This document shows, one piece after another, positions 4,751-62,400 of a DNA stretch of 64,000 bases. The position numbers and the translations under genes were made by a program. The stretch is from Mobula hypostoma (taxonomy: Eukaryota), in NCBI RefSeq assembly GCF_963921235.1, contig NC_086106.1, forward strand, positions 21,576,001 to 21,640,000. Reading direction: 5' to 3'. The notes under the pieces were generated by a model that did not search any database, had not been told where the DNA came from, and saw only the letters and a program-made list of their open reading frames with translations. Within the stretch, counting starts at the first letter, position 1. Every line of letters starts with the position of its first letter.

Positions 4751-5959
4751 ATGAAGTGGCCACTCACTTCTGTTTTATTTATTTATTTATTTATTCCCCC
4801 CCCCCCCCCCCGGCAAGCCATCCTAATTTCCGCACCATCCATCAAAGTGACCTATAATGGACATGGAAATTCTCATCAGCTTAATCACGTGGCCATCCCG
4901 TACAACTTAAAGTTTGTTGTTCTCGAAGTCAGCCGCTAACCTGCCATTGTCTTTGAAAAATTGCAATAGCTGGTCTCTGTTTTTCCTTTTTCAATCTTTC
5001 ATTAGTTTAATAAAATATAAACATGACATAATGATAGTACAAATTTATTGGGAACACATTGTTATGATTAACATTAAATTACATACTTTTGAATGCGTTG
5101 AACGATGAGGGTTCTGCAGTCATTAATCACGCTTCATTCCATATAGATATCATCTCAGCATCATTTAAAAACCCGATTCCGGTGTTTCTGGTAATATTTG
5201 CATAATTCTTTTCAGGAAAACGTACGAAACTTTCCTTGATATTTTCTTTCAAATAATCGGTCTACACAGAAGTTTCAACAGCGATAGATCCATGGATGCA
5301 TTGTCTCGCAGAGAAACAAAATAACGGAAATATTTGTTCTTTACATTCTTGATAAGCTGTTCTTGAAATGAAATTTGTTGGAATTGTTCTGAAAGAATGG
5401 TCCGTAATTAATTTATGTTGCTCATGGAGGGGTGTTCATGTTAATTTATTGTTACATTTTAGCTTGGGTTATACAGCTATTCGATTGTGCGTTCGTGGGG
5501 CACCGTGACTTTAACTGGCGTGTGTCATTTTCCCCTCCCTTATCTGTATGAGACTGAATAGGATATTTCCCCATTTCTCCATGGTCCGTTTTGTGTTTGT
5601 CCCAATGAGGACATAAGTTTAGATAGATGACGAAATCAAATTGTTTCTCGTCTGCCATTATGGACCGAATGCTCGCTACAACATATTTGCTCCAGTGGTG
5701 GCTGACGGAAGGCTCATTCCGAAGCGAAAGATCCCAAAAGTGTCACATGTAGTTAGCAGCGAGTTTCCGTATCGGCTAATGGCGAGTGTATTATCGGATT
5801 GACTTCAGCTGAGGACAGAATATTAGGATTTATCTTTGCGTCTTTTCGAAACTGTAAGTTCTTGCTGGATTCTTGGTCTCTTCTCTGAAGTACTGGCGCT
5901 CGCAAGTTTTTGTACAGCCCTTTTCGTCTTTTGAAACGCTGTGTAAGCCACCGCAATGA

Positions 5960-5998
5960 GGTTTTTGTGCATCTCACTTCCTCCAGTATATCACCGTG
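5960..5998 (-). other. 23-bp-spacer RSS of the supporting V-delta segment
   Basis: Minus strand: heptamer CACGGTG (5998-5992), 23-nt spacer, perfect nonamer ACAAAAACC (5968-5960). Confidence 0.95.
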
Positions 5999-6304
5999 CT
6001 CTTCCCCGACTGATGGCACATTGGTACACAGCGGAGTCGCTCACTTGCAGCTCCGAGATCTTTAACATGCTGATTTTCTTCTCACGATCGATAGAACCGA
6101 AGAAGTGTCCTTTAGCAGCACTTTCCTGACCTTGATCGTCAGAGGTATGCGTCTGGAGTAGAAGTTTTGGAGGTTCTGCTTGGAGCTGCTGGAACCAGTG
6201 TACCGTGTATGTACAAAACCCTAAATATTTGCATGTTAATGTGACGACGTCATCTGAATGAACAGTCTGTAGAGGTGGATTCTTCGACACAAGGGATAAT
6301 GGAT
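5999..6304 (-). CDS. TCR delta-type V exon with no leader found; NAR-TCR supporting V
   Basis: Acceptor ttccttcAG at 6305, phase 1. Open frame DPLSLVSKNPPLQTVHSDDVVTLTC-KYLGFCTYTVHWFQQ...LKISELQVSDSAVYQCAISRGR with canonical Cys/Trp/Cys and an extra CDR1 Cys. Followed by a 23-RSS. I found no leader exon between it and the J at 7734. Confidence 0.92.
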
Positions 6305-7733
6305 CTGAAGGAATTTAAAAGAGGCATCATTATTACTTTACTACTGGTATTGTATCCGCCACAAATAGGAATAGGTGAAGGATTGACACCTGCTGGTTTC
6401 GTTGACAATGTCTCCAAAATTCTTTTGTTGCCCTTGGAAATTCTCTCGGCGACTTGCTGAAGTAGAAAAATAATTGGCCGTTGGTGCAGCAGGTGAAACG
6501 AAATTATCAGCAGGAGAAATAGAATTACTGCAATTAAATGCTGGAAAATTTGAAACCACAGGGATTAATAATTAAAATATGGAACATTTCTGAAACAACC
6601 TCCTAGAGCCATCTGCCAAAGGGATGGAGTATTTACCTGTTCTATTGTGGAAAATTATATTTGTATTTATATTTTTGTTAGGGAAGGAAGAATGGGAAAA
6701 CAATTAAACAGTATATTGTTTACAACGACTGATGCACCATCTACAAATATGTTGCTCTTTGATTTAGTAGATTAAGATCCACGAGAGGGACATGATTTTC
6801 CTTGTTTGTGATGAGCAGCTGTGGGGTAAGAGTAGTCCTTGTTAAATTTAACACACTCCCCGGTAAAACTTCCTAACCATACGGTGTAACTCACCCCAAT
6901 GCTAAAGGAGCTCAGCAGGCCAGGCAGCATTAATGGAAAAGACTAGACAGGCGATGCTTCAATACAGTCACTTTATCAGTTTATTCGTAGATGCGACCTG
7001 GCTTGCCGAGATCATTGAGCATTTTGGGTGTGTTGACTGGGTTTCCAGAATCTGCAGATTTTCTCATTTTTTCCCCATTTTCCGTGCCAGGTAATCCTCC
7101 AATTTCCTTACAGATCAGTCAGCTTTCAGATGTTTTCTTTTTCCCCTTCACAGTTTTTCTTTTCTTTTTTTTTTTTTTTGCTGCATCTGCTATATCTGTT
7201 GTCAACTTAACATGTTTTCAGGCAATCTGCCAGATGTTGCTTGCATTGCAGTGTACAAGTGGGTGTCAGTTTCATTCGCAGCTGGGCCTTTACCCTGATT
7301 GATTGCATCTATAGCTTGTTCATAATCAAGAGTTACTTTCTCAATCTTGCAATATGAAGTTTCTGTGGACCTGCAGAATCACTCAGCACAGGACTTCGCT
7401 GAGATGTTTCGTTATCTTAATAGCGCTATGCGCTGACCAAAGATGAGCATGTCTTGTGCTGCACCCGAAACCGCCTGCTGTCACACAAATAGCCGTGTTG
7501 CATATGAGAATGAACAGTGGCCGCTCCTCTCGTACTGCATGGGCACAGAGATGCGTTGCCTTTTCTTAACTGCACTTTTCCTTAGACTCGTTCATGGTTA
7601 GTAATGTAAACGTGTTATTTTTCTTAAAGCCCAATCCCGTAAATCTCAATGAAACTTGATATATTCAAGAAAACTGTCCTTATAAACACATTGATAGAAC
7701 GGCTTAATAAATTTCGCTAGTTCAGATACTTAC

Positions 7734-7788
7734 CTATTGTGACTATAACAGTGGAACCAGTTCCATATAGATTTCCAGTGTAGTATCT
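7734..7788 (-). other. NAR-type J segment
   Basis: Translates RYYTGNLYGTGSTVIVTI+g, containing the YGxG-x-T-V motif of IgNAR-like J segments. Ends at donor GTAAGT (7733). Its phase 1 matches the V-delta acceptor. Confidence 0.92.
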
Positions 7789-7827
7789 CACCGTGTTCCG
7801 ACTCTCAGTGTCACTGGTACAAGAATC
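7789..7827 (-). other. 23-bp-spacer RSS of the J segment
   Basis: Plus-strand reading: CACCGTG (7789-7795), 23 nt, ACAAGAATC (7819-7827). Confidence 0.9.
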
Positions 7828-8132
7828 ATCTTCAGTTCATTCGAATCAGTGGCCGTCATTGGACAGTGTACACATAATCCAGACATTTAAAACATCACAA
7901 ACATTATTCAGTGTTCCACAAACACCAGTGAAGAATCTACTTTTGAAAAAGAAAACTCTATAAATGGCTGTACGATATTTTCCGAATGTCGGTTCTCGAA
8001 ACTGAGCCAATGACAAAGACGAACTCATGGAAGGGACAAAGCAGAATGGAGTTTCCCAGATCACAGCGTGAAAATAATCCAACATATGATTATTTTTCCC
8101 GACTCCAGAATATATAGTTTATCGGGACAGAA

Positions 8133-8203
8133 AGTTCTTGTTCGATTATCGTCCGTTGTGTATGTCCCAATATCCACAGTGTTTCGTGTAAGGTACAAAT
8201 CGC
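8133..8203 (-). other. D segment (8161-8174, GATATTGGGACATA) flanked by two 12-type RSSs
   Basis: 3' RSS (minus reading): CACAACG, 12 nt, ACAAGAACT. 5' RSS (plus reading): CACAGTG (8175-8181), 12 or 13 nt, then TACAAATCG or ACAAATCGC. All three frames are open (DIGT / ILGH / YWDI). Confidence 0.88.
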
Positions 8204-8554
8204 AGAACAGGATTGGAGTGGAATTAACAGCTTCCAAACTGCTATTACACCTTCCATGCTGTTGGAGCAGGGTCCCATGCGAAATAAGGTTTGGGTAGGA
8301 AGACAATCATTCTCAGTTGCTGTTCGTTGGAAATTATTTTGCGAAAAGTGATTTTGTGTATACAAATTCTGAACAGAAAAGAACTAGAGTAGAAACAGTA
8401 AACTTCCTGTACCATTACAAAAACAATACTGTATGGAACGCAGGCGAAGTGCCTCGATGAATTACGGACAGATTAACTCCACTCTTTAAACTGTTGATTG
8501 GATAAATTACAACCAGTATTTAAGAACGGCGGAAATCCTCTCCCGATTTCTGTG

Positions 8555-8839
8555 TATACTTATAGTGAACTTTACAGACATAGGTGGCGCTGTCCTTAAC
8601 TACAAGATTCATAATTTTCAGGGTAATTGTCATTTCTGCTTTATTTTCCATTATTAAATGTCTTCCTCCTGTGTTGATCCGCTCTCCCTGCGTTCCTGAC
8701 TGCGTGTGTTTGATGAAATATCCGGTTACAAAAGTATCGCTTGACGATTTTTTATGGAACCTGCATGTGATGGTGAGAGACTGGCATTCATTTTTCGTCA
8801 CCGTTGTCGGGCTCTGGGTCACGGACTGGCTGAAGAAGA
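8555..8839 (-). CDS. IgNAR-like (VNAR) V exon; NAR-TCR V
   Basis: Acceptor ttccAG at 8840, phase 1. Open frame FFSQSVTQSPTTVTKNECQSLTITC...ERINTGGRHLIMENK...LKIMNLVVKDSATYVCKV. There are 62 residues between the canonical Cys, versus 70-72 in the two TCR Vs here, matching the VNAR CDR2 deletion. It has an I-x-x-GGR motif and an extra FR1 Cys. The 3' end is 8568 or 8555 depending on which heptamer is used. Confidence 0.9.
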
Positions 8840-8986
8840 CTGGAAATTAAGAATATGGAGAAGCGAAGCGGCATTAGATGTGAAACGCGCAAGACGGCTA
8901 ATATAATAACTTCATGGAATTCTGAATCTACTTGTTCAATTTTATATCTATGTCACATATTGCGGACAGTTGTGAACAGTACTCAC

Positions 8987-9029
8987 GGCGAAAGCAGAGG
9001 CACAGCGTGACACCCAAGAGAAAGTTCAT
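8987..9029 (-). CDS. Leader (signal peptide) exon of NAR-TCR V
   Basis: ATG at 9029, MNFLLGVTLCLCFR+c, donor GTGAGT. A 147-nt phase-1 intron joins it in frame to the V exon. Confidence 0.9.
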
Positions 9030-9078
9030 TGTTTTGTCTCCGGGATTTGATGTTTCGTATTACGGACAGCGAGAGTGT

Positions 9079-9135
9079 TGTGGTAGTTTGTTCACCAGAA
9101 CTGGGCTGAGACACCTCGACCGGAAGCTGATGTAC
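9079..9135. promoter_or_regulatory. Candidate V promoter motifs (RUNX, ETS, CRE-like)
   Basis: TGTGGT at 9079-9084, CCGGAAG at 9120-9126 and TGATGTAC at 9128-9135, 50-105 bp upstream of the leader ATG. These are short motifs and could occur by chance. Confidence 0.3.
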
Positions 9136-12100: not shown

Positions 12101-12364
12101 GAGGTCCAGCGGTCACATTCGGTAACGAGAAGGTACTACATGAAGGCACACATCAGGGGCAACTTTTCACACTTGCTGATAGCTTCGTTCCGGAGAAGGC
12201 CATGAAAACCTTCAACTGGAGACCGACTGTGCTGCTGGAACTCTATTTGTCGATTTTGAGAGAAGAAGAGGTGTGAACGCTTCTCTCCATCCCCCCATCC
12301 TTTCTCTCTGTCTGTCAGGCTGTCTTTCTCGCTCTCTCTAACTCTGTCTCTTCGTCTATCAATG

Positions 12365-12365
<1 letters not shown>

Positions 12366-12424
<59 letters not shown>
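12366..12424. repeat. (TC)n microsatellite
   Basis: About 29 TC units. They produce the ERERER stretch in spurious ORF 12315..12608. Confidence 0.95.
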
Positions 12425-12428
<4 letters not shown>

Positions 12429-15400
12429 CTCCACCTTACTCACATTCTTCTCGGTTATATTTATGAATGTCTGTCTTGTGCTGCTATGCTCGTGTTTTGA
12501 AACGAATTGTGTCTGTAATCTCTCGCACTCAGGTCTTTGTACCGCTCTCCTGCTCTGTATCACCTTGTCTGTGTGGAGTAATTGCTGCATGTCATACACC
12601 ATTGTCATGGAATGGTTATGTAAATTCGTTAAACGACTGTTTTACTTTTTGTCATGATTGATAGAGCAGGAGAACCGTCATTCAGAAATGCTTACATTAT
12701 CTCTACAACACTTCTATAGATGTAGAGGGGAAAGTGTATTGACGGACTACATCATTGCGTAGTACGGAATCATCAACATTCTTGAACGGAAAATCCCACG
12801 ATTCGACACAGAACATCATTGGTAAATCCCTTCCAAGCATTGAGCACAGCGACCTGAAACGCTGCATTAGGTGTTTCTGGTGCAATCAGGTAGAATATAT
12901 AATAGCCTCAGGATTCGCACCCCCATGTTCAAGTACAGTTACTACCTCACAGCCATCAGGCACTTCAACTTAGGGGATGACAACAATCGCTGCCAGTTTA
13001 TTAAGATGTACCCACATTTAATGAACTTGCAATAAAGACACTTTAACTTGTTATCTCATGTTATCGTTATTTATTGTTATTTTTATATTTGCTTTTGAAC
13101 AGTCTGCTGTGTTCCAAACTCTCGATTTTCTTTCATTGACTCTGTTAGAGGTGGAATATTATAGATTTGTTGAGCATGCCCGCCCGTTCTATAGGGTTAT
13201 ATGTTATGCAATTTGATAATAAAGGTTTCTCTCAAATTTGAAATTGGACTAAATTAGATATTTCTCTGGAGACGGTATTTACAGTACAGCTGTTGGGAAC
13301 AACGCGTAACATTACACCTTGTATATTTCAATCTGAGAGTGACGATGACCATCATAAAAGGACTGATGAGGCGGATTGTCAGACACCAAGGAAATAGGAT
13401 CTTGAGAATGTTAAAGCGGAATTAACCAATACTTTAATGTTGATCAGCGTGTACATGACACCAAACAAGTAGCCAGCGCTATAACACCGTTTCCTTTGTT
13501 TGAAACTGTGGCAAATGTAAGCGATATTACTTGGAAGTAATTCTGGTGTATTCCTGCGTGAAAAATAAAGAACACTGGCAGATCCATAAAGAAGTGTGTT
13601 GAATAAGGGAAAATTGGTAAAAATGTGTTTATCCACGGGAATATTTATGAAAATGCAGCACTATTTTGAGTAACTTAAGAAGTGGGACACAGTAAAATGG
13701 AAGGATTACTTTAGTTATTCTGTTTTGCTTATTTTCTCGTTTATGTCTGCTGTGAAACACAGATATAGAAGAATATAACAGTATAATTCTCCTGCATGAA
13801 TGATCCACTTAGTAAAATGCAACGTTCTCTCTTTTGTTCTTATGCAAAGTGCAATTTATGACAAGCGAATGTAGACCGTTCGGCTTCTTATTATGTTAAC
13901 AGTTTTCAGCCTGCACGTCCTACTTTGTCTTCATTTCACTTTGTCTACGTATCCCACAATAGGTCAATCAGCATTTTTTTTTCAATTTTGCAGCAGGTTG
14001 TTAGACTTCACTTATTTTCGAAAATTCGGCATCTCGCATATCATTCTGAGGACCCTGTTATTTATAACGTTCTTGCGTCTCAGTGATTTTGAATGCATCG
14101 TTGTCACTAACACTCGCTCATGCCGATACTCAATCAGTTTGCAGCCACAAAAGCTGAGTCATCCCTCGCTCACATCCAAAGCCAATCGAACGACAGGCCA
14201 CTGGAATCTAAAATACTCAGTCGATGTCCGTGAATTAGTCACCGCTATTGTTATCTACTCTAAAATGGTACCAGCATATAGGCTTCAAAATTGTCTATCT
14301 TTCTGCTCACGGGGAATGTTGCAACAGCTGTCATTTCGACTTTGAGCTAAATGTGATTTGCTACGCAAATATATTCTGCGGGAAATATCAAGAAACCCAT
14401 TTAGAAATAACTTCTCTCTCATTTTGAAGGGCATGAAAATGAAGTGATACTGCAATATTTCCAGGGTCACGTTGAGACAAGTGAGATGTTGAGGTACATA
14501 CCTGTTATGTGATCATCTCTTTACACGTGCAGACTATGTTTTCATTCATGCAAAGACTATTGATCTCGCTGTTGCAAGAGCATTTCGATGACTACCTGAT
14601 AACGAGCCATCATCCTCCATTGCCAAATTACGTCAGGACGTTATAAACAAACTCGTGCTCCATTTCCCACTAACACAGGAAGGTCATTAAAATGTCCTTA
14701 ATAGATGGCACTATAGTTGTTTTACCAAAGTCGGGAACCATCGAGAATCATTCATTAAAGAAGCACAATTAAAATTCAATTTGCCCATATTAGACAGCCG
14801 AAAGTTACACAAATTATTCCGTTTCAGGCTGGCGATTATATATTAATGATGCCAAGAATTTTGCTTGACACGATTCCTCCCTGAATGTACCAATCAGCAG
14901 AAATATTTATTGTATGTAATTCTGGTATTCGAAGTGTATTTGTCTTTCAAAATGATAGAACTCAACAGTTCAACGAATGTGTATCTCCTTCCCGGCTGTA
15001 GAATAGGGTCCGATATAGAGTAATGAATTCGAAAGGGGAATTAATCTTTCCTGACAACCATTTCATAAAACCATTAGCTGGAAAGATGTCACGATCCTAA
15101 TACATTGAGCAGTGAGGAAATGAAACGTGTGAACTGTAATAATCTAGTCCTCACAGAATCAAGACCGTGGAGACACTAGTGCCGTGGACTTTTTTTTTTG
15201 CGATAATCTGCAGACAATGCTTTATTACGCCCAGAGTCCTAGCTTTAGAGTATGTACCTTCCCAACTGTAATCCGATTTACAGGAATGGGTGCGCTGACT
15301 CAGCTTTGATATTCAGAATTAATAGTGTACTTCTCGTTCAAGCTTGAAATTAAATCTTGAAAAAAAAACTAATCCACCCTGTTTGAATACGGTCGCATTC

Positions 15401-18400
15401 TGTCGGGCTCTTCTTACACTTGGTGATACATACAGTGCGATAATCATACCATCTCCAGAAACCAATCTGGAAATTGCAAATTGTGGTGTGAACTTGACGG
15501 TTATTCAATGTCACCGCAGTCAGGCACTGAATCACCGTTTGACTAAAAGATCCTGGAAATTAAAAAAAAAAAAGTGATAGATTAATGGAAATCAGGGCAA
15601 ACAAGTCAGCAGTGTTAACACCCGTTTTGTTTGAAATTGGAAATGGTTTTGTTAATTTGATATTAACCTGTAACCTCCAACTATGTACAAATCCCGTCAT
15701 GGTGTGAACAAGGGACAGGATGATGAAGAGAAGGATATCCTTAGGTTTCGATAAAAACTCATTTCCACAGATGGACATTCTTTCTCAAACTGCTTCCATT
15801 AATTTATAAGACAAATGTCTCCTTATACCCCCTGTCGTTATCAATCAACATTTTCAATTCTCTCTCCATGCCATCCCAATTCCGCAAGTGCAACACAATT
15901 TGTTTCATCGAGGTTACATATATTTTGAAACCATAACTTTTCCCCTTTAAATTGTACACTGATTCAATTTCCCGGATGCTGTCTGTCCCGCTGAATATTT
16001 TAAAACGAATTTCTACATAGAAATTGAGCATTTACTCCTATGCATTCATGTTTGTTTACATTCAGTTAACCTTTGGGTACCAACCTGTGCAACATTAATC
16101 TTGCTGTCATCTCAGTTGCTCTCTTAAAAGTATTGCTATTTTCCACATCAGATGACATTGTCTTGTCACAGTTCGGCTGTTCCTGATCAAACAGGAATTT
16201 GCATTTGCTTTTACTTTTCCTTTAGAATGTTGCCTTCTTTTCTTACCAATACTAAGTACCACTGGTGCTGCAGAAGGTATGAGGTTTCTTGCGCCTGTTC
16301 GTGTGTACAGATCTGAAAATATGACAGTAAGTTCCATTGAAATATTAGACTTTGGTTTTAATATGTGTTAAAGTTCCGTTAGTGTTTGTCTTCCTATTTT
16401 CAGTCTTTATTCCCTCTTTCACAACTGGCGTAATCTTCCAGAAACATTTCACAGTCAGCAGTCAGACAACCATTAGTATTCCATCTTATTGTACCGCTCT
16501 GCCTGCCTCGGTCTGACCCGACTGACATTCCTTAACAGGTAGTATTAATCAACATTTGTGTGCTTCAGTCAGTCCTCAAAACATTAATTTTGTTTATCTG
16601 GCGTCACTCTAGTAGAAGCTTTTCCACCACCTGTGTGAATTACTTTGTCCTACCGAAGGTACCAAAGCGTCAACTCATTCAAATGATGTGATCTAGTTTC
16701 AAAACCGTATTAATGTTGCAAGGTATTGGGGTTTATGAAAATTAACAAGCAGAATGCATAAAGTAGCGGTAACAATAAAAAAAAAGTCTGCAATTATCCC
16801 TTGTCTTTCGGTTTTTGTGTCTGTAACACGTTCGCATGTTTATTTAGTTGGTAAGCACTGCTTCTGTTTGAAAATACTTTGTAGGATATACTTTTTATTC
16901 GAATTGAGTAATTATCTATAATTCTGAAGACCTGTGTGAATTATAAATGTGCGATATTGAAATTTCCCCTGATCATTACAATAAAATAAACTGATCTTAA
17001 CATATGTTATTAGCTAAGATATTGTCCTGTTGGTGGGGTGTGGTTATTCACCACTCAAATAATGCGTATTGGCAGCTACACTTCCCTCATAGAGAGAAAA
17101 AAAGGAAGGTAGTCTTTGTAGACTACGTTATTGCAGTATTATCTCACTATAGGGATGTAAACTCATAACAAATGTATCCTAAAAATCTTTTTGAGTTGAA
17201 GGCGTTTCGGACAGTGCAAACAATGCCATCACATGTGATGAAATAGAAACCACGGTTTTAGCTTACGAGCTAACCAAATGCAGGTTTATAGTTGTTGTTG
17301 TTTTTTTGTTTTTTTTTTCTTTTTCACTAGTATTTCCTACACTGGGTCATGCTGGCCTCTCGCTCACTGATGCCAGAGGAAGCTGACTATGTGTGACGGT
17401 CTCTCTTTCTCTCAAAATCCGGTCCATTCACTGTTACCTGTGTCCAAACATTTTTTACTCAGTCTTTCTTCGTATTATACCGACCCATGCAATACTAAGC
17501 ACAATCCTTGTTCTTAATACATTCCACCATTTAATACCCAGACCACGGAGTGTTGGTGTTACATTAAGCTCCAAGCACCCAACGCCGTCACTGCCCATAC
17601 GACTCTGAACCTTAGGACACCAAACAGATTAACTATTCACAATAACACAACTACGAAACAAATTAAACACATATTTATAACGCTGAACGTGGTCATTGAT
17701 AATTGCATATGAGTCTTACATCACTAGGTGCAGAAATCCTTCTTGGTAAAATTGCTACACAAAGTCAGAGAACCAAAGTGTAGTAGAGCGCGAAAACTGT
17801 TTTAGCCTGAAATATCAACTTTGTGTTTATGTTCGTGGAAGCTGCCTGCCCTGCCGAGTTTCTCTAGCATTTGGTGTATCTTGCAACATTCCATTGAAAG
17901 CATTTTTTTCCATGTCAGCTGATCTATCATCATTTCCGACCTCACAGCTTTGGTATCATCATTTCTGACCTGACAGCTTTGGTACAGAATTCTCCCTCCA
18001 CTGTCCAGGAGGTATTTACCAAATGTCTCTTCAGTGTGGAATTGTACCTGTCTCCTTTGCTTTCTCTGGCATTTTATTCCCCGTATTCCTTACCATCTGT
18101 ACATTCAATGGCATGTTGCAAGATACAGCCTCATTTCGTGTATCAAACCTAATGTCTGGATACTACATCACTAACCATCCCCATCAAGGTCTGTCGTCAG
18201 AGGTTCAAGATGGGTTGCATGGACAACCGATGCATCCGGCTGAGCCTGATTTCAGATTTAGTGACGTTACTGAAGAGAGTTCTCAGAGGCAAGATATACC
18301 ATATCTTGGATACTCAAGGCCAAGTCTAGAATTGAATAGGGAAATAGAAGATCGGCGATTTAAGTATTATATAGTGGCACCAAAACAGGTCTGTCAATTA

Positions 18401-48777: not shown

Positions 48778-48816
48778 AGTTTTTGTGCTAGTATTCAATT
48801 GTTTTAATTCGCCGTG
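48778..48816 (-). other. 23-bp-spacer RSS of the conventional TCR V
   Basis: Minus strand: CACGGCG (48816-48810), 23 nt, ACAAAAACT (48786-48778). Confidence 0.92.
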
Positions 48817-49126
48817 AGGCTCAGGGCGCAATAATACACCGCAGTGTCTTTAATCTGGAGACCCCAGATAGTTAAGCTGAAGAGTGAAGTATCTGTCTGG
48901 AGATCTGCAGAGAAACGTTTTTGCAACAGCTCTCCTCTCATTTCTTGTGAGTTCCAAGAACGTCTCCACACAATAAACTGCAGTTTGCCCTGTGCTGATC
49001 GTCTGTACCAATGCAAATCATAGTTGAGGCTTGTGGTACTGTAGACACAGTTTATTTTCACCATTTCACCAGATCCTTTTTTCTCTAAAGTCTGTTTTTG
49101 AGTTACAGAAACGGCGGATATCTGAC
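48817..49126 (-). CDS. Conventional TCR alpha/delta V exon
   Basis: Acceptor cactttcAG at 49127, phase 1. Open frame QISAVSVTQKQTLEKKGSGEMVKINC-VYSTTSLNYDLHWYRR...RFSADLQTDTSLFSLTIWGLQIKDTAVYYCALS, followed by a 23-RSS. No extra Cys. Confidence 0.93.
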
Positions 49127-49414
49127 CTGAAAGTGGTTCAGGGTAAAAAGAAAAGCATAGCCGTTATTAGACGATGCCAGCGAACAACTATTAAGTTTTT
49201 AATATATTTTTTTTACCATAAAATCTGATATATCTAACCATGTTGAAGAACCTTGTGAACTACGTGACACTTTGTATGGAAAAGAACAACAGCTTACATT
49301 AAAAATTGCAAATCATTTATTCTTGCAGGGTTTCCTGAAATGCCTTCGTGATCAAACGTTTCTGTGAAGCAAGTCGAGAGAGCGACAGCCCCAAAACAAC
49401 TGTTTTATTTATTT

Positions 49415-61199: not shown

Positions 61200-62400
61200 G
61201 AGAATAATAATAGACATTTTGAAGTAATGGATGAGATCTTCATGAGGAATAAGGCGTATTTACCGAAGGCTTGAAGGCCTATACAGCAGGTTATGGAAAG
61301 AGACAAATGAAACAGTTCCTGGGGTCTTAACTACTATATTCCTGCGCTCAGTCGTCAGAAGTATGAGAAGTAACTAATATTGTTCTATTGTTTAGATATT
61401 ACCATGGAAACCATAGACCGGTCTCACATCAAGAATAGGGAATATGCTGGAGTGAATTCTTATGGAGATGATCAATGAGCAATACCATTTCCTAATTAGT
61501 GCGAGTCAGCATCGCTTTGTGCTGTGTAAGTCATGTCTTACTAAGTATATAGATATTGTTTTTTTTTAAAATATACGGAAATATGAAGACTGTGATCGAT
61601 GAGCAAAAGCTGGTGGTGTTGTGATAGCGTAAAATACTGGGAAAGGAAAGAACGGAATACAGATCATTGGCAGATATGAGCAGAACAATGGAGAATTGCA
61701 CTAAACTCTGCAGTTTGTTAGAGGAAATCTAAAGAGACAACACACTCTTCATGACAGGGCAATCGGGAGCGTTGATGAGCACAGGCGTCTTGGGCAGAAG
61801 TTCATAGCTCCATGAACGGGCCTACAGAATTTGATAGGTTGTTTGAAAAGATATATGGCAGCTTGCCTTTATTCTTCGAGGCATTGTATTCAGACGTCAC
61901 GAAGTCACGTTGCAGCTTTATGAAATTCCATATAGGACGCACATGAATTATTCATTCAGTTCTGGTTACCCCTTTAAAGGAAAGACGTCGCGGCTTTGAG
62001 GACGTTGTGGAAAGTACTTGCAAAGATATTGTTTCGATTAGAGGGCATTTGGTAGTGCAAGAGATTGGATAAAGGTTGGTTGTTTTATCTGGAGTGACAG
62101 AGGCTGAAGGGAGATGAATAGACATGTATAAGTTTATGAAAAGCTTAGATAAGTAGGAAAACCACATATTTTTCCCTGGTTTGAATTGTCGAATACCCCT
62201 GGGCATTCATTTAACGTGGGACAGGATAATTTTCAAGGAAATGTGAGAGGCGAGTATTATCTGTTAACAGATTTTGATTATGTTTGAAATACACTGACGG
62301 GTGTAGTGATAGACGCAGATGCAGGAGGGACTTCTAAGAGACGTTTAGGTTAGAACATAAATGTTAGGAAAAAAGACGGATATGGACATCGTGCCGGCAT
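61200..62400 (+). mobile_element. Decayed CR1 LINE
   Basis: Degenerate CR1 RT and 3' motifs running to a 3'-UTR-like end. Many stops. Confidence 0.6.

What the first reader, a model, noticed from the sequence alone, without database searches (positions are those of the whole stretch)
5960..9029. Apparently complete NAR-TCR (doubly rearranging, two-V-domain TCR delta) cassette
Seen in sequence: on the minus strand a leader, a VNAR-like V, a D and a J lie within 1.3 kb. The J donor is in phase with the acceptor of a TCR V-delta exon 1.43 kb downstream, for which I found no leader and which has its own perfect 23-RSS. All exons are open. Established: this is the architecture of shark NAR-TCR, where one VDJ event builds an IgNAR-like distal domain and a second VDJ event joins the supporting V-delta to D-J-C-delta. 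Inference: the repeat content points to a ray genome, where I am not aware of NAR-TCR being well characterised, so this may be an undescribed batoid NAR-TCR family with divergent domains.
Basis: partly seen in the sequence, partly recalled or inferred. Interest (0 to 1): 0.9.

Follow-up and report, generated by a model that had tools for sequence, protein, structure and literature searches.

The report
Ray two-V-domain T-cell receptor gene cassette
This is a genuine germline NAR-TCR cassette, the shark-type T-cell receptor delta unit that stacks an antibody-like V domain on a normal V domain, found here in a ray; the kind is already known, but RNA data confirm its predicted splicing and show two side features I could not find described.

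Summary
On the minus strand lie a split leader, a NAR-type V exon, one D, one J with a phase-1 donor, and 1,430 nt further a leaderless V-delta exon with a 23-RSS.

All the published NAR-TCR hallmarks that could be tested are present:
- a Cys in the a-b loop and no FR2 Trp in the distal V;
- no leader, and a CDR1 Cys, in the supporting V-delta.

The distal V groups with NAR-TCR V genes of sharks and the sawfish, not with IgNAR V.

RNA contigs from a close relative show the J-to-V-delta splice at exactly the predicted bases. They also show a D-J coding joint with 9 inserted letters. RNA of the same species shows the leader-to-V splice and the V-delta exon.

It is a new member of a known kind. 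The literature states that NAR-TCR occurs in all cartilaginous fish, and RefSeq already holds unnamed models, including sawfish ones. This scan noted at least eight more such cassettes elsewhere in this genome.

Caveat: the distal V's own RSS has lost its nonamer (9/16 matches, against 14-15/16 in three orthologues). Full assembly of the distal domain from this copy is therefore unproven.

Two extras:
- The leader also splices directly to the "leaderless" V-delta.
- Supporting V-deltas in six species carry tandem RSS units.

The parts
9030..9094 (-). 5' untranslated region. A TATA-like CATAAAT lies upstream at 9142-9136.
   Evidence: An RNA contig of the relative (X9 record 32) covers 8987-9094. 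Sequence. The TATA reading is inference.
8987..9029 (-). Leader exon (MNFLLGVTLCLCFR plus 1 base), donor GTGAGT, phase 1
   Evidence: The splice joint 8839|8987 is seen in RNA of the same species (X11) and of the relative (X9).
8555..8839 (-). NAR-TCR-type distal V exon, with Cys in the a-b loop (TKNECQSLTITC) and no FR2 Trp (GYFIKH)
   Evidence: V-set E 3e-8. The best 31 PDB matches are all shark VNAR. It scores 58-91 bits to NAR-TCR V against 37-48 bits to IgNAR V. Tree and AU test.
8516..8554 (-). Degenerate RSS of the distal V: CACAGAA-23-CTTAAATAC (9/16)
   Evidence: Orthologues have 14-15/16 with a 22-nt spacer. 17% of random CAC sites reach 9/16.
8175..8203 (-). 5' RSS of D: GCGATTTGT-13-CACTGTG
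8161..8174 (-). Single D segment GATATTGGGACATA; its core is conserved in shark cassettes
   Evidence: The D-J coding joint in RNA retains 8174-8166.
8133..8160 (-). 3' RSS of D: CACAACG-12-ACAAGAACT
7789..7827 (-). J RSS: GATTCTTGT-23-CACGGTG
7734..7788 (-). J segment (..LYGTGSTVIVTI), donor G|GTAAGT, phase 1
   Evidence: RNA joints 7785|8166 (D-J coding joint with 9 inserted letters) and 6304|7734 (splice to V-delta).
6305..7733 (-). Intron between J and the supporting V-delta. It holds an abundant interspersed repeat at about 6789-7151 and no credible leader exon.
   Evidence: Leader scan. Depth peak and joints.
5999..6304 (-). Leaderless supporting V-delta exon, with Cys in CDR1 (KYLGFCTYTVHW)
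   Evidence: V-set E 8.5e-13. It scores 81-108 bits and 50-56% identity to supporting V-deltas of sharks and the sawfish. An RNA contig of the same species covers 6073-6254 with 0 mismatches.
5960..5998 (-). V-delta 23-RSS, unit 1: CACGGTG-23-ACAAAAACC (15/16)
5905..5943 (-). Second, tandem RSS-like unit: CACAGCG-23-ACAAAAACT (14/16), 16 nt after unit 1
   Evidence: The same tandem arrangement follows supporting V-deltas in five other species.

Best explanation
This is a germline NAR-TCR cassette in the TCR alpha/delta locus of a ray.

How it works. Transcription starts about 70-110 nt upstream of the leader. In developing T cells, RAG joins the cassette's own D and J, and in a working copy the distal NAR-type V as well. 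This forms an exon for an unpaired, antibody-like distal V domain. The J donor then splices in frame onto the leaderless supporting V-delta exon. That exon rearranges separately, through its 23-RSS, to D-delta, J-delta and C-delta far downstream on the same strand. The product is a three-domain TCR-delta chain. The Cys in the a-b loop of the distal V and the Cys in CDR1 of the supporting V are expected to form an interdomain disulfide.

What is shown here: the exon structure, the splice sites used in RNA (leader to V, J to V-delta), D-J joining, the hallmark residues and family membership.

What is inferred: V-to-DJ joining for this copy, V-delta joining to D-delta/J-delta, the disulfide, and surface expression with TCR-gamma.

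In this copy the distal V's RSS has lost its nonamer, so the cassette may assemble its distal domain rarely or never. The leader also splices directly to the V-delta exon, which would give an ordinary one-V TCR-delta chain.
For: Anatomy and reading frames.

Hallmarks as defined in PMC1845163, all present in the sequence: leader, a-b loop Cys and no WYRK Trp in the NAR-TcR V; no leader and a CDR1 Cys in the supporting V-delta.

No leader-like exon with a good donor lies between J and V-delta. The only RNA joints listed into 6304 come from the J donor and from the NAR leader (two joints were not shown).

Homology:
- The best PDB matches are all VNAR.
- A search of 1.84 billion proteins returns two-V RefSeq models from seven shark species and the sawfish with the same order of parts.
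- Local scores separate NAR-TCR V (58-91 bits) from IgNAR V (37-48 bits).
- In the tree the window's V is sister to the sawfish NAR-TCR V, and holding it with IgNAR V is rejected (p-AU 0.035).

Orthologous cassettes in sawfish, epaulette shark and catshark share the single D with a conserved core, the same V-D and D-J spacing (about 375-407 nt) and the same RSS types.

RNA:
- Joint 6304|7734 has GT..AG ends, in the relative.
- Joint 7785|8166 has 9 inserted letters and removes both RSSs, in the relative.
- Joint 8839|8987 is seen in the same species and in the relative.
- A contig of the same species covers the V-delta exon with no mismatch.

No C-domain exon lies in the 64 kb.
Against: - The distal V's RSS scores 9/16, no better than 17% of random CAC sites. 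Orthologues score 14-15/16. The differences listed for the relative do not repair it.
- No transcript with V joined to DJ was seen. The one long contig has a germline V next to a joined DJ.
- The J-to-V-delta and D-J joints come from one RNA run of a related species (contigs, depth about 16), possibly from a paralogous cassette.
- RNA evidence in the same species is thin (depths 2-20, some contigs 2-10% different).
- D-delta, J-delta and C-delta are not in the window.
Confidence: 0.9

Rival explanations
1. The cassette is a decaying NAR-TCR copy. Its distal V can no longer rearrange because its RSS nonamer is lost. Its working output would then be a conventional one-V TCR-delta chain, made by splicing the NAR leader directly onto the supporting V-delta. 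Transcripts that contain the V exon would be sterile.
For: The V RSS scores 9/16 against 14-15/16 in three orthologues. The joint 6304|8987 (leader donor to V-delta acceptor, GT..AG, in frame, depth 21.9) is seen in RNA of the relative, at a depth similar to the J-to-V-delta joint. The only long contig shows a germline V with a joined DJ, which runs into a stop after the V exon. A fully decayed cassette lies 6 kb away.
Against: The distal V exon is fully open and keeps every hallmark residue. Its branch length is similar to the sawfish's. D and J still recombine. RAG can use poor RSSs at low rates. Contigs break at diverse junctions, so missing V-DJ joins prove nothing. The leader-to-V-delta joint may simply be a by-product of transcribing unrearranged alleles.
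Confidence: 0.4
2. It is an IgNAR (secreted heavy-chain-only antibody) cluster, or a fragment of one, lying next to an unrelated TCR V segment.
For: The distal V's best solved-structure matches are IgNAR V domains. [quoted passage not shown]
Against: - It has one D, whereas IgNAR clusters have three (PMC4279169).
- It has no FR2 Trp and has the a-b loop Cys.
- It scores 37-48 bits to IgNAR V but 58-91 bits to NAR-TCR V.
- The AU test rejects a clade with IgNAR V.
- The J donor is seen spliced to the V-delta exon.
- No C-domain exon lies in the window.
Confidence: 0.02
3. The supporting V is an ordinary V-alpha/delta segment with its own undetected leader, and its position downstream of the NAR unit is coincidental.
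For: Phase-1 acceptors are universal for V exons, so being in phase is weak evidence on its own.
Against: No leader candidate has a good donor. The only joints listed into 6304 come from the J and from the NAR leader. The V has the CDR1 Cys and the SLVSKNPPLQ start specific to supporting V-deltas. It is 50-56% identical to those of sharks and the sawfish, but only 23% to the conventional V in the same window.
Confidence: 0.03

Closest known systems
Nurse shark / elephant shark NAR-TCR (Criscitiello et al. 2006; hallmarks as summarised in Venkatesh et al. 2007, PMC1845163)
   Same: Leader, NAR-type V, D, J, then a leaderless supporting V-delta with its own RSS. The distal V has the a-b loop Cys and lacks the WYRK Trp. 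The supporting V has the CDR1 Cys. Two independent rearrangements are needed.
   Different: The host is a ray. Domains are 43-57% identical to shark ones. The J motif is YGTGS rather than DGSGT. The distal V's RSS nonamer is lost in this copy.
Sawfish (Pristis pectinata) cassette behind RefSeq model XP_051882926, named 'immunoglobulin kappa light chain-like' (locus L001)
   Same: It is the nearest relative in the tree. It has the same order of parts, a similar geometry (V-D about 380-390 nt, D-J about 390-410 nt), a YG.G-type J, a supporting V-delta beginning S/PLSL..KNPPLQ, and a tandem second RSS unit after the V-delta.
   Different: The sawfish distal V has a near-consensus RSS (CACAGCG-22-ACAAAAACC). 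Its J-to-V-delta intron is about 1.9 kb, against 1.43 kb here. Domain identity is about 50%.
IgNAR V(DDD)J-C clusters
   Same: The distal V is of the same single-domain V lineage, and its best PDB matches are VNARs.
   Different: IgNAR has three D segments, keeps the FR2 Trp, lacks the a-b loop Cys, and its J splices to constant exons. Identity here is 33-37%, and the tree test rejects a grouping.
TCR-mu of marsupials and monotremes
   Same: It is a three-domain TCR chain in which an unpaired distal V sits on a supporting V. This is a convergent architecture (PMC3457774, PMC7615758).
   Different: It has an independent origin from VH-like genes. The marsupial supporting V is germline-joined. 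It is not homologous to this cassette.

Membership tests
NAR-TCR | Distal NAR-type V with its own split leader | tested here: met
   Leader 9029-8987 with a GTGAGT donor. The splice 8839|8987 is seen in RNA of the same species and of the relative.
NAR-TCR | Cys in the a-b loop of the distal V (PMC1845163) | tested here: met
   TKNECQSLTITC. The same ECQ(S/T)L motif is present in the shark and sawfish models shown.
NAR-TCR | Distal V lacks the canonical Trp of the WYRK motif (PMC1845163) | tested here: met
   GYFIKHTQ, against FF(R/K)QTQ in NAR-TCR V and WY(R/F) in IgNAR V.
NAR-TCR | Distal V closer to NAR-TCR V than to IgNAR V | tested here: met
   58-91 bits against 37-48 bits. It is sister to the sawfish NAR-TCR V, in a clade with 87/95 support. 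The AU test gives p 0.035 against an IgNAR grouping.
NAR-TCR | Own D and J with RSSs that allow V-D-J assembly of the distal domain | tested here: inconclusive
   The D (13/12-nt spacers) and J (23-nt spacer) RSSs are good, and a D-J coding joint is seen in RNA. The V RSS scores only 9/16, and no V-DJ join was observed.
NAR-TCR | J of the distal unit splices in frame to a supporting V-delta exon that has no leader | tested here: met
   Phase-1 donor and acceptor. The joint 6304|7734 with GT..AG ends is seen in RNA of the relative. There is no leader candidate and no other listed joint into 6304.
NAR-TCR | Supporting V-delta has a conserved Cys in CDR1 (PMC1845163) | tested here: met
   KYLGFCTYTVHW, against GFCQYTVHWY in sharks and GFCPYTVHWY in the sawfish. 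The conventional V at 48.8 kb lacks it.
NAR-TCR | Supporting V-delta rearranges to D-delta/J-delta/C-delta (second rearrangement) | tested here: inconclusive
   A 15/16 23-RSS is present. RNA contigs end at the RSS border (5998) or continue from 6007 into letters that do not fit the stretch, but no D-delta/J-delta sequence was identified. C-delta is not in the window.
NAR-TCR | Three-domain chain expressed on T cells with TCR-gamma | not testable with these tools
   This needs protein or single-cell data.
IgNAR cluster | Three D segments and IgNAR constant exons after J | tested here: not met
   There is one D, no C-domain exon in 64 kb, and the J splices to a V exon.

The most novel reading that the evidence does not exclude
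NAR-TCR cassettes may have two outputs, and their second rearrangement may be specially equipped.

(1) The NAR leader can skip the distal V, D and J and splice directly, in frame, onto the supposedly dedicated, leaderless supporting V-delta. A cell that fails to assemble the distal domain, or a copy that cannot, could then still make a conventional TCR-delta chain.

(2) Supporting V-deltas in six elasmobranch species are followed by 2 to about 9 tandem 61-nt units, each made of a 23-RSS plus a conserved linker. The distal V segments and two conventional V segments have a single RSS. This suggests a conserved RSS array that affects how, or how often, the supporting V rearranges.

I found neither feature in the papers I could read. 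The 2006 primary paper is not held, so either may already be described.
Probability: 0.3. Interest if true: 0.65.

Novelty: new member of a known kind. Interest (0 to 1): 0.42.

Why it matters
NAR-TCR is one of two known cases in which a T-cell receptor carries an unpaired, antibody-like antigen-binding domain. Almost all molecular detail comes from a few sharks.

A checked ray cassette, with transcript evidence for the unusual J-to-V splice and for D-J joining, extends that detail to batoids. It also gives exact coordinates for annotating the many copies in this genome, which automatic pipelines leave unnamed or misname in related species.

The side observations are testable leads on how the two rearrangements are coordinated and on how such cassettes decay or are re-used. 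They are a copy whose distal V has lost its RSS, a leader-to-V-delta bypass splice, and the tandem RSS units behind supporting V-deltas.

Tried and rejected
- Word-based protein searches with each V exon alone found nothing. The exhaustive HMMER search was needed.
- The third word-based search, with the V-delta plus C part of a Mustelus model, looked for RefSeq models that put a leader directly on a supporting V-delta. None was convincing: P0069 starts with a non-leader extension.
- The primary NAR-TCR papers (PMC1458790, PMC3222143, PMC7909615 and the 2019 J Immunol paper) are not held. The defining features were therefore taken from PMC1845163.
- The supplement of PMC12227049 is not held.
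- Rfam found nothing in 5-17 kb.
- DNA-level repeat and blastn searches found no clear second copy of the cassette. The decayed copy is visible only at the protein level.
- The chimaera model P0017 is not in the contig index.
- I considered a Mobula hypostoma hit (P0019) as a way to confirm the species. It is an unrelated multi-V receptor.
- I did not fold a spliced two-V protein.
- The species name (lesser devil ray) comes from earlier notes of this scan and was not verified here.
Full report
**1. What is in the sequence**

Read on the minus strand, the region holds the following parts in order.
- Leader exon: 9029-8987, MNFLLGVTLCLCFR plus one base, donor GTGAGT.
- Intron of 147 nt.
- V exon: 8839-8555, acceptor ttaatttccag.
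- D: 14 nt at 8174-8161, between GCGATTTGT-13-CACTGTG and CACAACG-12-ACAAGAACT.
- J: 7788-7734, preceded by GATTCTTGT-23-CACGGTG and ending G|GTAAGT.
- Intron of 1,429 nt.
- Second V exon: 6304-5999, acceptor cttcag, followed by CACGGTG-23-ACAAAAACC.

Both V exons are open and match Pfam V-set (E 3e-8 and 8.5e-13).

Of 1,848 CAC sites in the window, five reach an RSS score of 13/16 or more. Three are in this cassette and one follows the only other intact V exon. The arrangement is not chance.

**2. Is the second V really leaderless?**

I scanned the J-to-V-delta intron for ATG-started, phase-1 exons of 10-30 codons. It gives only weak-donor candidates, and the most hydrophobic one lies inside an interspersed repeat. 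The same scan recovers the true leader upstream of the first V. In RNA, the only joints listed into 6304 come from the J donor and from the first V's leader (two joints were not shown).

**3. Family membership**

PMC1845163 states the hallmarks.
- The NAR-TcR V has a typical leader, a Cys in the a-b loop, and no Trp in the WYRK motif.
- The associated TcR-delta V lacks a leader and has a conserved CDR1 Cys.

All are present here: TKNECQSLTITC, GYFIKHTQ, and KYLGFCTYTVHW. The missing Trp is therefore a family mark, not damage.

Sequence searches agree.
- Against all PDB sequences, the first V's best 31 matches are shark VNARs (E 1e-13 to 1e-5), ahead of any other V type.
- An exhaustive HMMER search of 1.84 billion representatives gave 51 hits.
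- The best hits are RefSeq models from Heterodontus, Mustelus, Cetorhinus, Chiloscyllium, Hemiscyllium, Rhincodon and Scyliorhinus, and from the sawfish Pristis pectinata. They carry names such as "uncharacterized", "T cell receptor alpha chain-like" and "immunoglobulin kappa light chain-like".
- Nearly all of these read NAR-V, J (..DGSGTVVTVTADS), then a V beginning SLVSKNPPLQTS with GFCQYTVHWY.
- One Mustelus model (P0068, 404 aa) runs on through a J-delta-like FGNGS motif, a constant domain and a membrane anchor.

Local scoring separates two classes.

| Class | Score against the window's domains |
|---|---|
| NAR-TCR V | 58-91 bits |
| Supporting V-delta downstream of it | 81-108 bits |
| IgNAR V (Triakis IgNAR, bamboo-shark VNAR) | 37-48 bits |

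Identities are 43-57% to NAR-TCR V and 33-37% to IgNAR V. The second V is 50-56% identical to supporting V-deltas, but only 23% to the conventional V in the same window.

In a maximum-likelihood tree the window's V is sister to the sawfish NAR-TCR V, inside the NAR-TCR clade (87/95 support), with IgNAR V apart. Forcing it together with IgNAR V costs 21 log-likelihood units (p-AU 0.035). No C-domain exon lies anywhere in the 64 kb.

**4. Orthologous cassettes**

I fetched the DNA behind five models: sawfish L001, Hemiscyllium L002, Scyliorhinus L003, Heterodontus L004 and Rhincodon L005. The comparison of parts and spacing used the first three. The architecture is conserved.
- One D with a shared core: GATATTGGGACATA here, TGATATTGGCAACAGA in Hemiscyllium, TTATATTGGGTTAGT in Scyliorhinus.
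- V-end to D is 375-390 nt.
- D to J is 385-407 nt.
- The J RSS is of the type GGTTCTTGT-23-CACTGTG.
- The J is followed by a V-delta exon without a leader.

**5. Transcript evidence (assembled contigs of public RNA runs)**

In the run of a closely related species (X9, roughly 4-6% divergent):
- Joint 6304|7734 skips 1,429 nt with GT..AG ends. This is the predicted J-to-V-delta splice, at the predicted bases.
- Joint 7785|8166 removes 380 nt, including both RSSs, trims 5 nt of D and 3 nt of J, and has 9 other letters in between. This is a V(D)J coding joint.
- One 952-nt contig strings together part of the V exon, the germline V-D spacer and the joined DJ. By length its remaining 91 letters fit the J and the first 30 nt of V-delta. 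The leader and V-exon joints at the same depth (16.1) probably belong to it too. This is a transcript of a DJ-joined allele.

In runs of the window's own species:
- The leader-to-V splice (8839|8987) is seen.
- V-exon contigs are seen.
- A 182-nt contig of the V-delta exon has no mismatch.

A contig of the relative covers exactly 5998-6304. It breaks at the acceptor and at the RSS border, as expected where splice partners and junctions vary.

Limits. These are contigs, at low depth. The key joints come from the relative and could stem from a paralogous cassette. The tissues are unknown.

**6. Caveat on "complete"**

The first V's own RSS is CACAGAA-23-CTTAAATAC, 9/16 matches, a score reached by 17% of random CAC sites in the window. 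The three orthologues compared have CACAGCG-22-ACAAAAACC, CACAGTG-22-TCAAAAACT and CACAGTG-22-ACAAATATC, 14-15/16. The differences listed for the relative do not restore it.

D-J joining works, but V-to-DJ joining from this copy is unproven and may be inefficient. The exon itself shows no decay.

**7. Two side observations**

(a) RNA of the relative also holds joint 6304|8987, with GT..AG ends and depth 21.9. Here the leader donor is spliced directly to the V-delta acceptor. The product is in frame (...CFR-H-PLSLVS...). The "leaderless" V can therefore borrow the NAR leader when the distal unit is skipped. This may be a by-product of transcribing unrearranged alleles, or a route to an ordinary one-V delta chain.

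(b) Sixteen nt after the V-delta RSS lies a second one, CACAGCG-23-ACAAAAACT at 5943-5905. The same holds in all five other species. Supporting V-deltas are followed by tandem units of about 61 nt, each made of a 23-RSS plus a linker close to TGAACATGGTGGGGATTACAGA.

| Species | Tandem RSS units after the supporting V-delta |
|---|---|
| This window | 2 |
| Sawfish | 2 (second decayed) |
| Hemiscyllium | 4 |
| Catshark | about 9 |
| Heterodontus | 3 |
| Rhincodon | 3 |

The distal V segments and two conventional V segments have at most one RSS each. I found no description of either feature in the held library, but the primary 2006 paper is not held.

**8. Known or new**

[quoted passage not shown] - PMC12227049 colour-codes NARTCR V in genome maps of four species that include a stingray.
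- RefSeq holds sawfish models of the same build.
- Earlier notes of this scan list at least eight further NAR-TCR cassettes in this genome, from 382 kb before to 5.2 Mb beyond this window.
- They also list a TCR-delta D-D-J-J block 1.12 Mb before the window's start. That is downstream for this minus-strand cassette.
- They name the genome as the lesser devil ray. I did not verify those notes.

The finding is a correct identification of a new member of a known kind, not a new family.

**9. Context in the window**

- A decayed second cassette lies at about 15.55-13.3 kb on the same strand. A NAR-V-like start follows a ttccag acceptor, and a PISLVSDNPP V-delta start lies 2.15 kb further.
- A conventional V with a 23-RSS lies at 49.13-48.82 kb. 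It has only an 8-codon, non-hydrophobic leader candidate.
- A V-delta fragment with stops lies at about 61.4 kb.

Noticed in passing
window 5905-5998 (-); L001 11502-11620; L002 7080-7300; L003 18817-19380; L004 11131-11320; L005 20532-20720: Supporting V-deltas in six elasmobranch species are followed by tandem units of about 61 nt. Each unit is a 23-RSS plus a conserved linker (close to TGAACATGGTGGGGATTACAGA). There are 2 copies here and about 9 in the catshark. The distal NAR V segments and two conventional V segments have at most one RSS. The function is unknown, and I found no description in the held papers.
   Followed up: partly
window joint 8987|6304 (-): RNA of a related species contains the NAR leader spliced directly and in frame to the supporting V-delta exon, skipping the distal V, D and J. 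It is one contig at depth 21.9 with canonical GT..AG ends.
   Followed up: partly
window 8516-8554 (-): The distal V's RSS has lost its nonamer (9/16). The sawfish, epaulette shark and catshark orthologues keep 14-15/16 with a 22-nt spacer.
   Followed up: yes
window about 13300-15560 (-): Probable decayed NAR-TCR cassette. A NAR-V-like exon start (FSQTVIQCLTAVTLNN...) follows a ttccag acceptor. A supporting-V-delta-like start (PISLVSDNPPHQ) lies 2.15 kb downstream. Both are truncated, and DNA similarity to the intact cassette is almost gone.
   Followed up: partly
window 48819-49127 (-), RSS at 48816: An intact conventional TCR V exon (..DTAVYYCALS) with CACGGCG-23-ACAAAAACT. The only phase-1 leader candidate upstream is 8 non-hydrophobic codons (MVRYIRFY), so it may be a pseudogene or have a distant leader.
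   Followed up: partly
window about 61330-61413 (-): Short V-delta-like fragment with stop codons (WFPW*YLNNRTILVTSHTSDD*), probably another decayed supporting V-delta.
   Followed up: no
window about 6789-7151: An interspersed repeat inside the J-to-V-delta intron is hugely represented in all four RNA runs (summed depth up to about 26,000). Many variant copies are present. Rfam has no match.
   Followed up: no
window 8679-8752 (-): The CDR1 to FR2 part of the distal V exon is replaced by unalignable sequence in RNA contigs of both species. Expressed paralogous cassettes therefore differ mainly there.
   Followed up: no
window 12308-12439: A (CT)n-rich microsatellite lies between the intact and the decayed cassette.
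   Followed up: no
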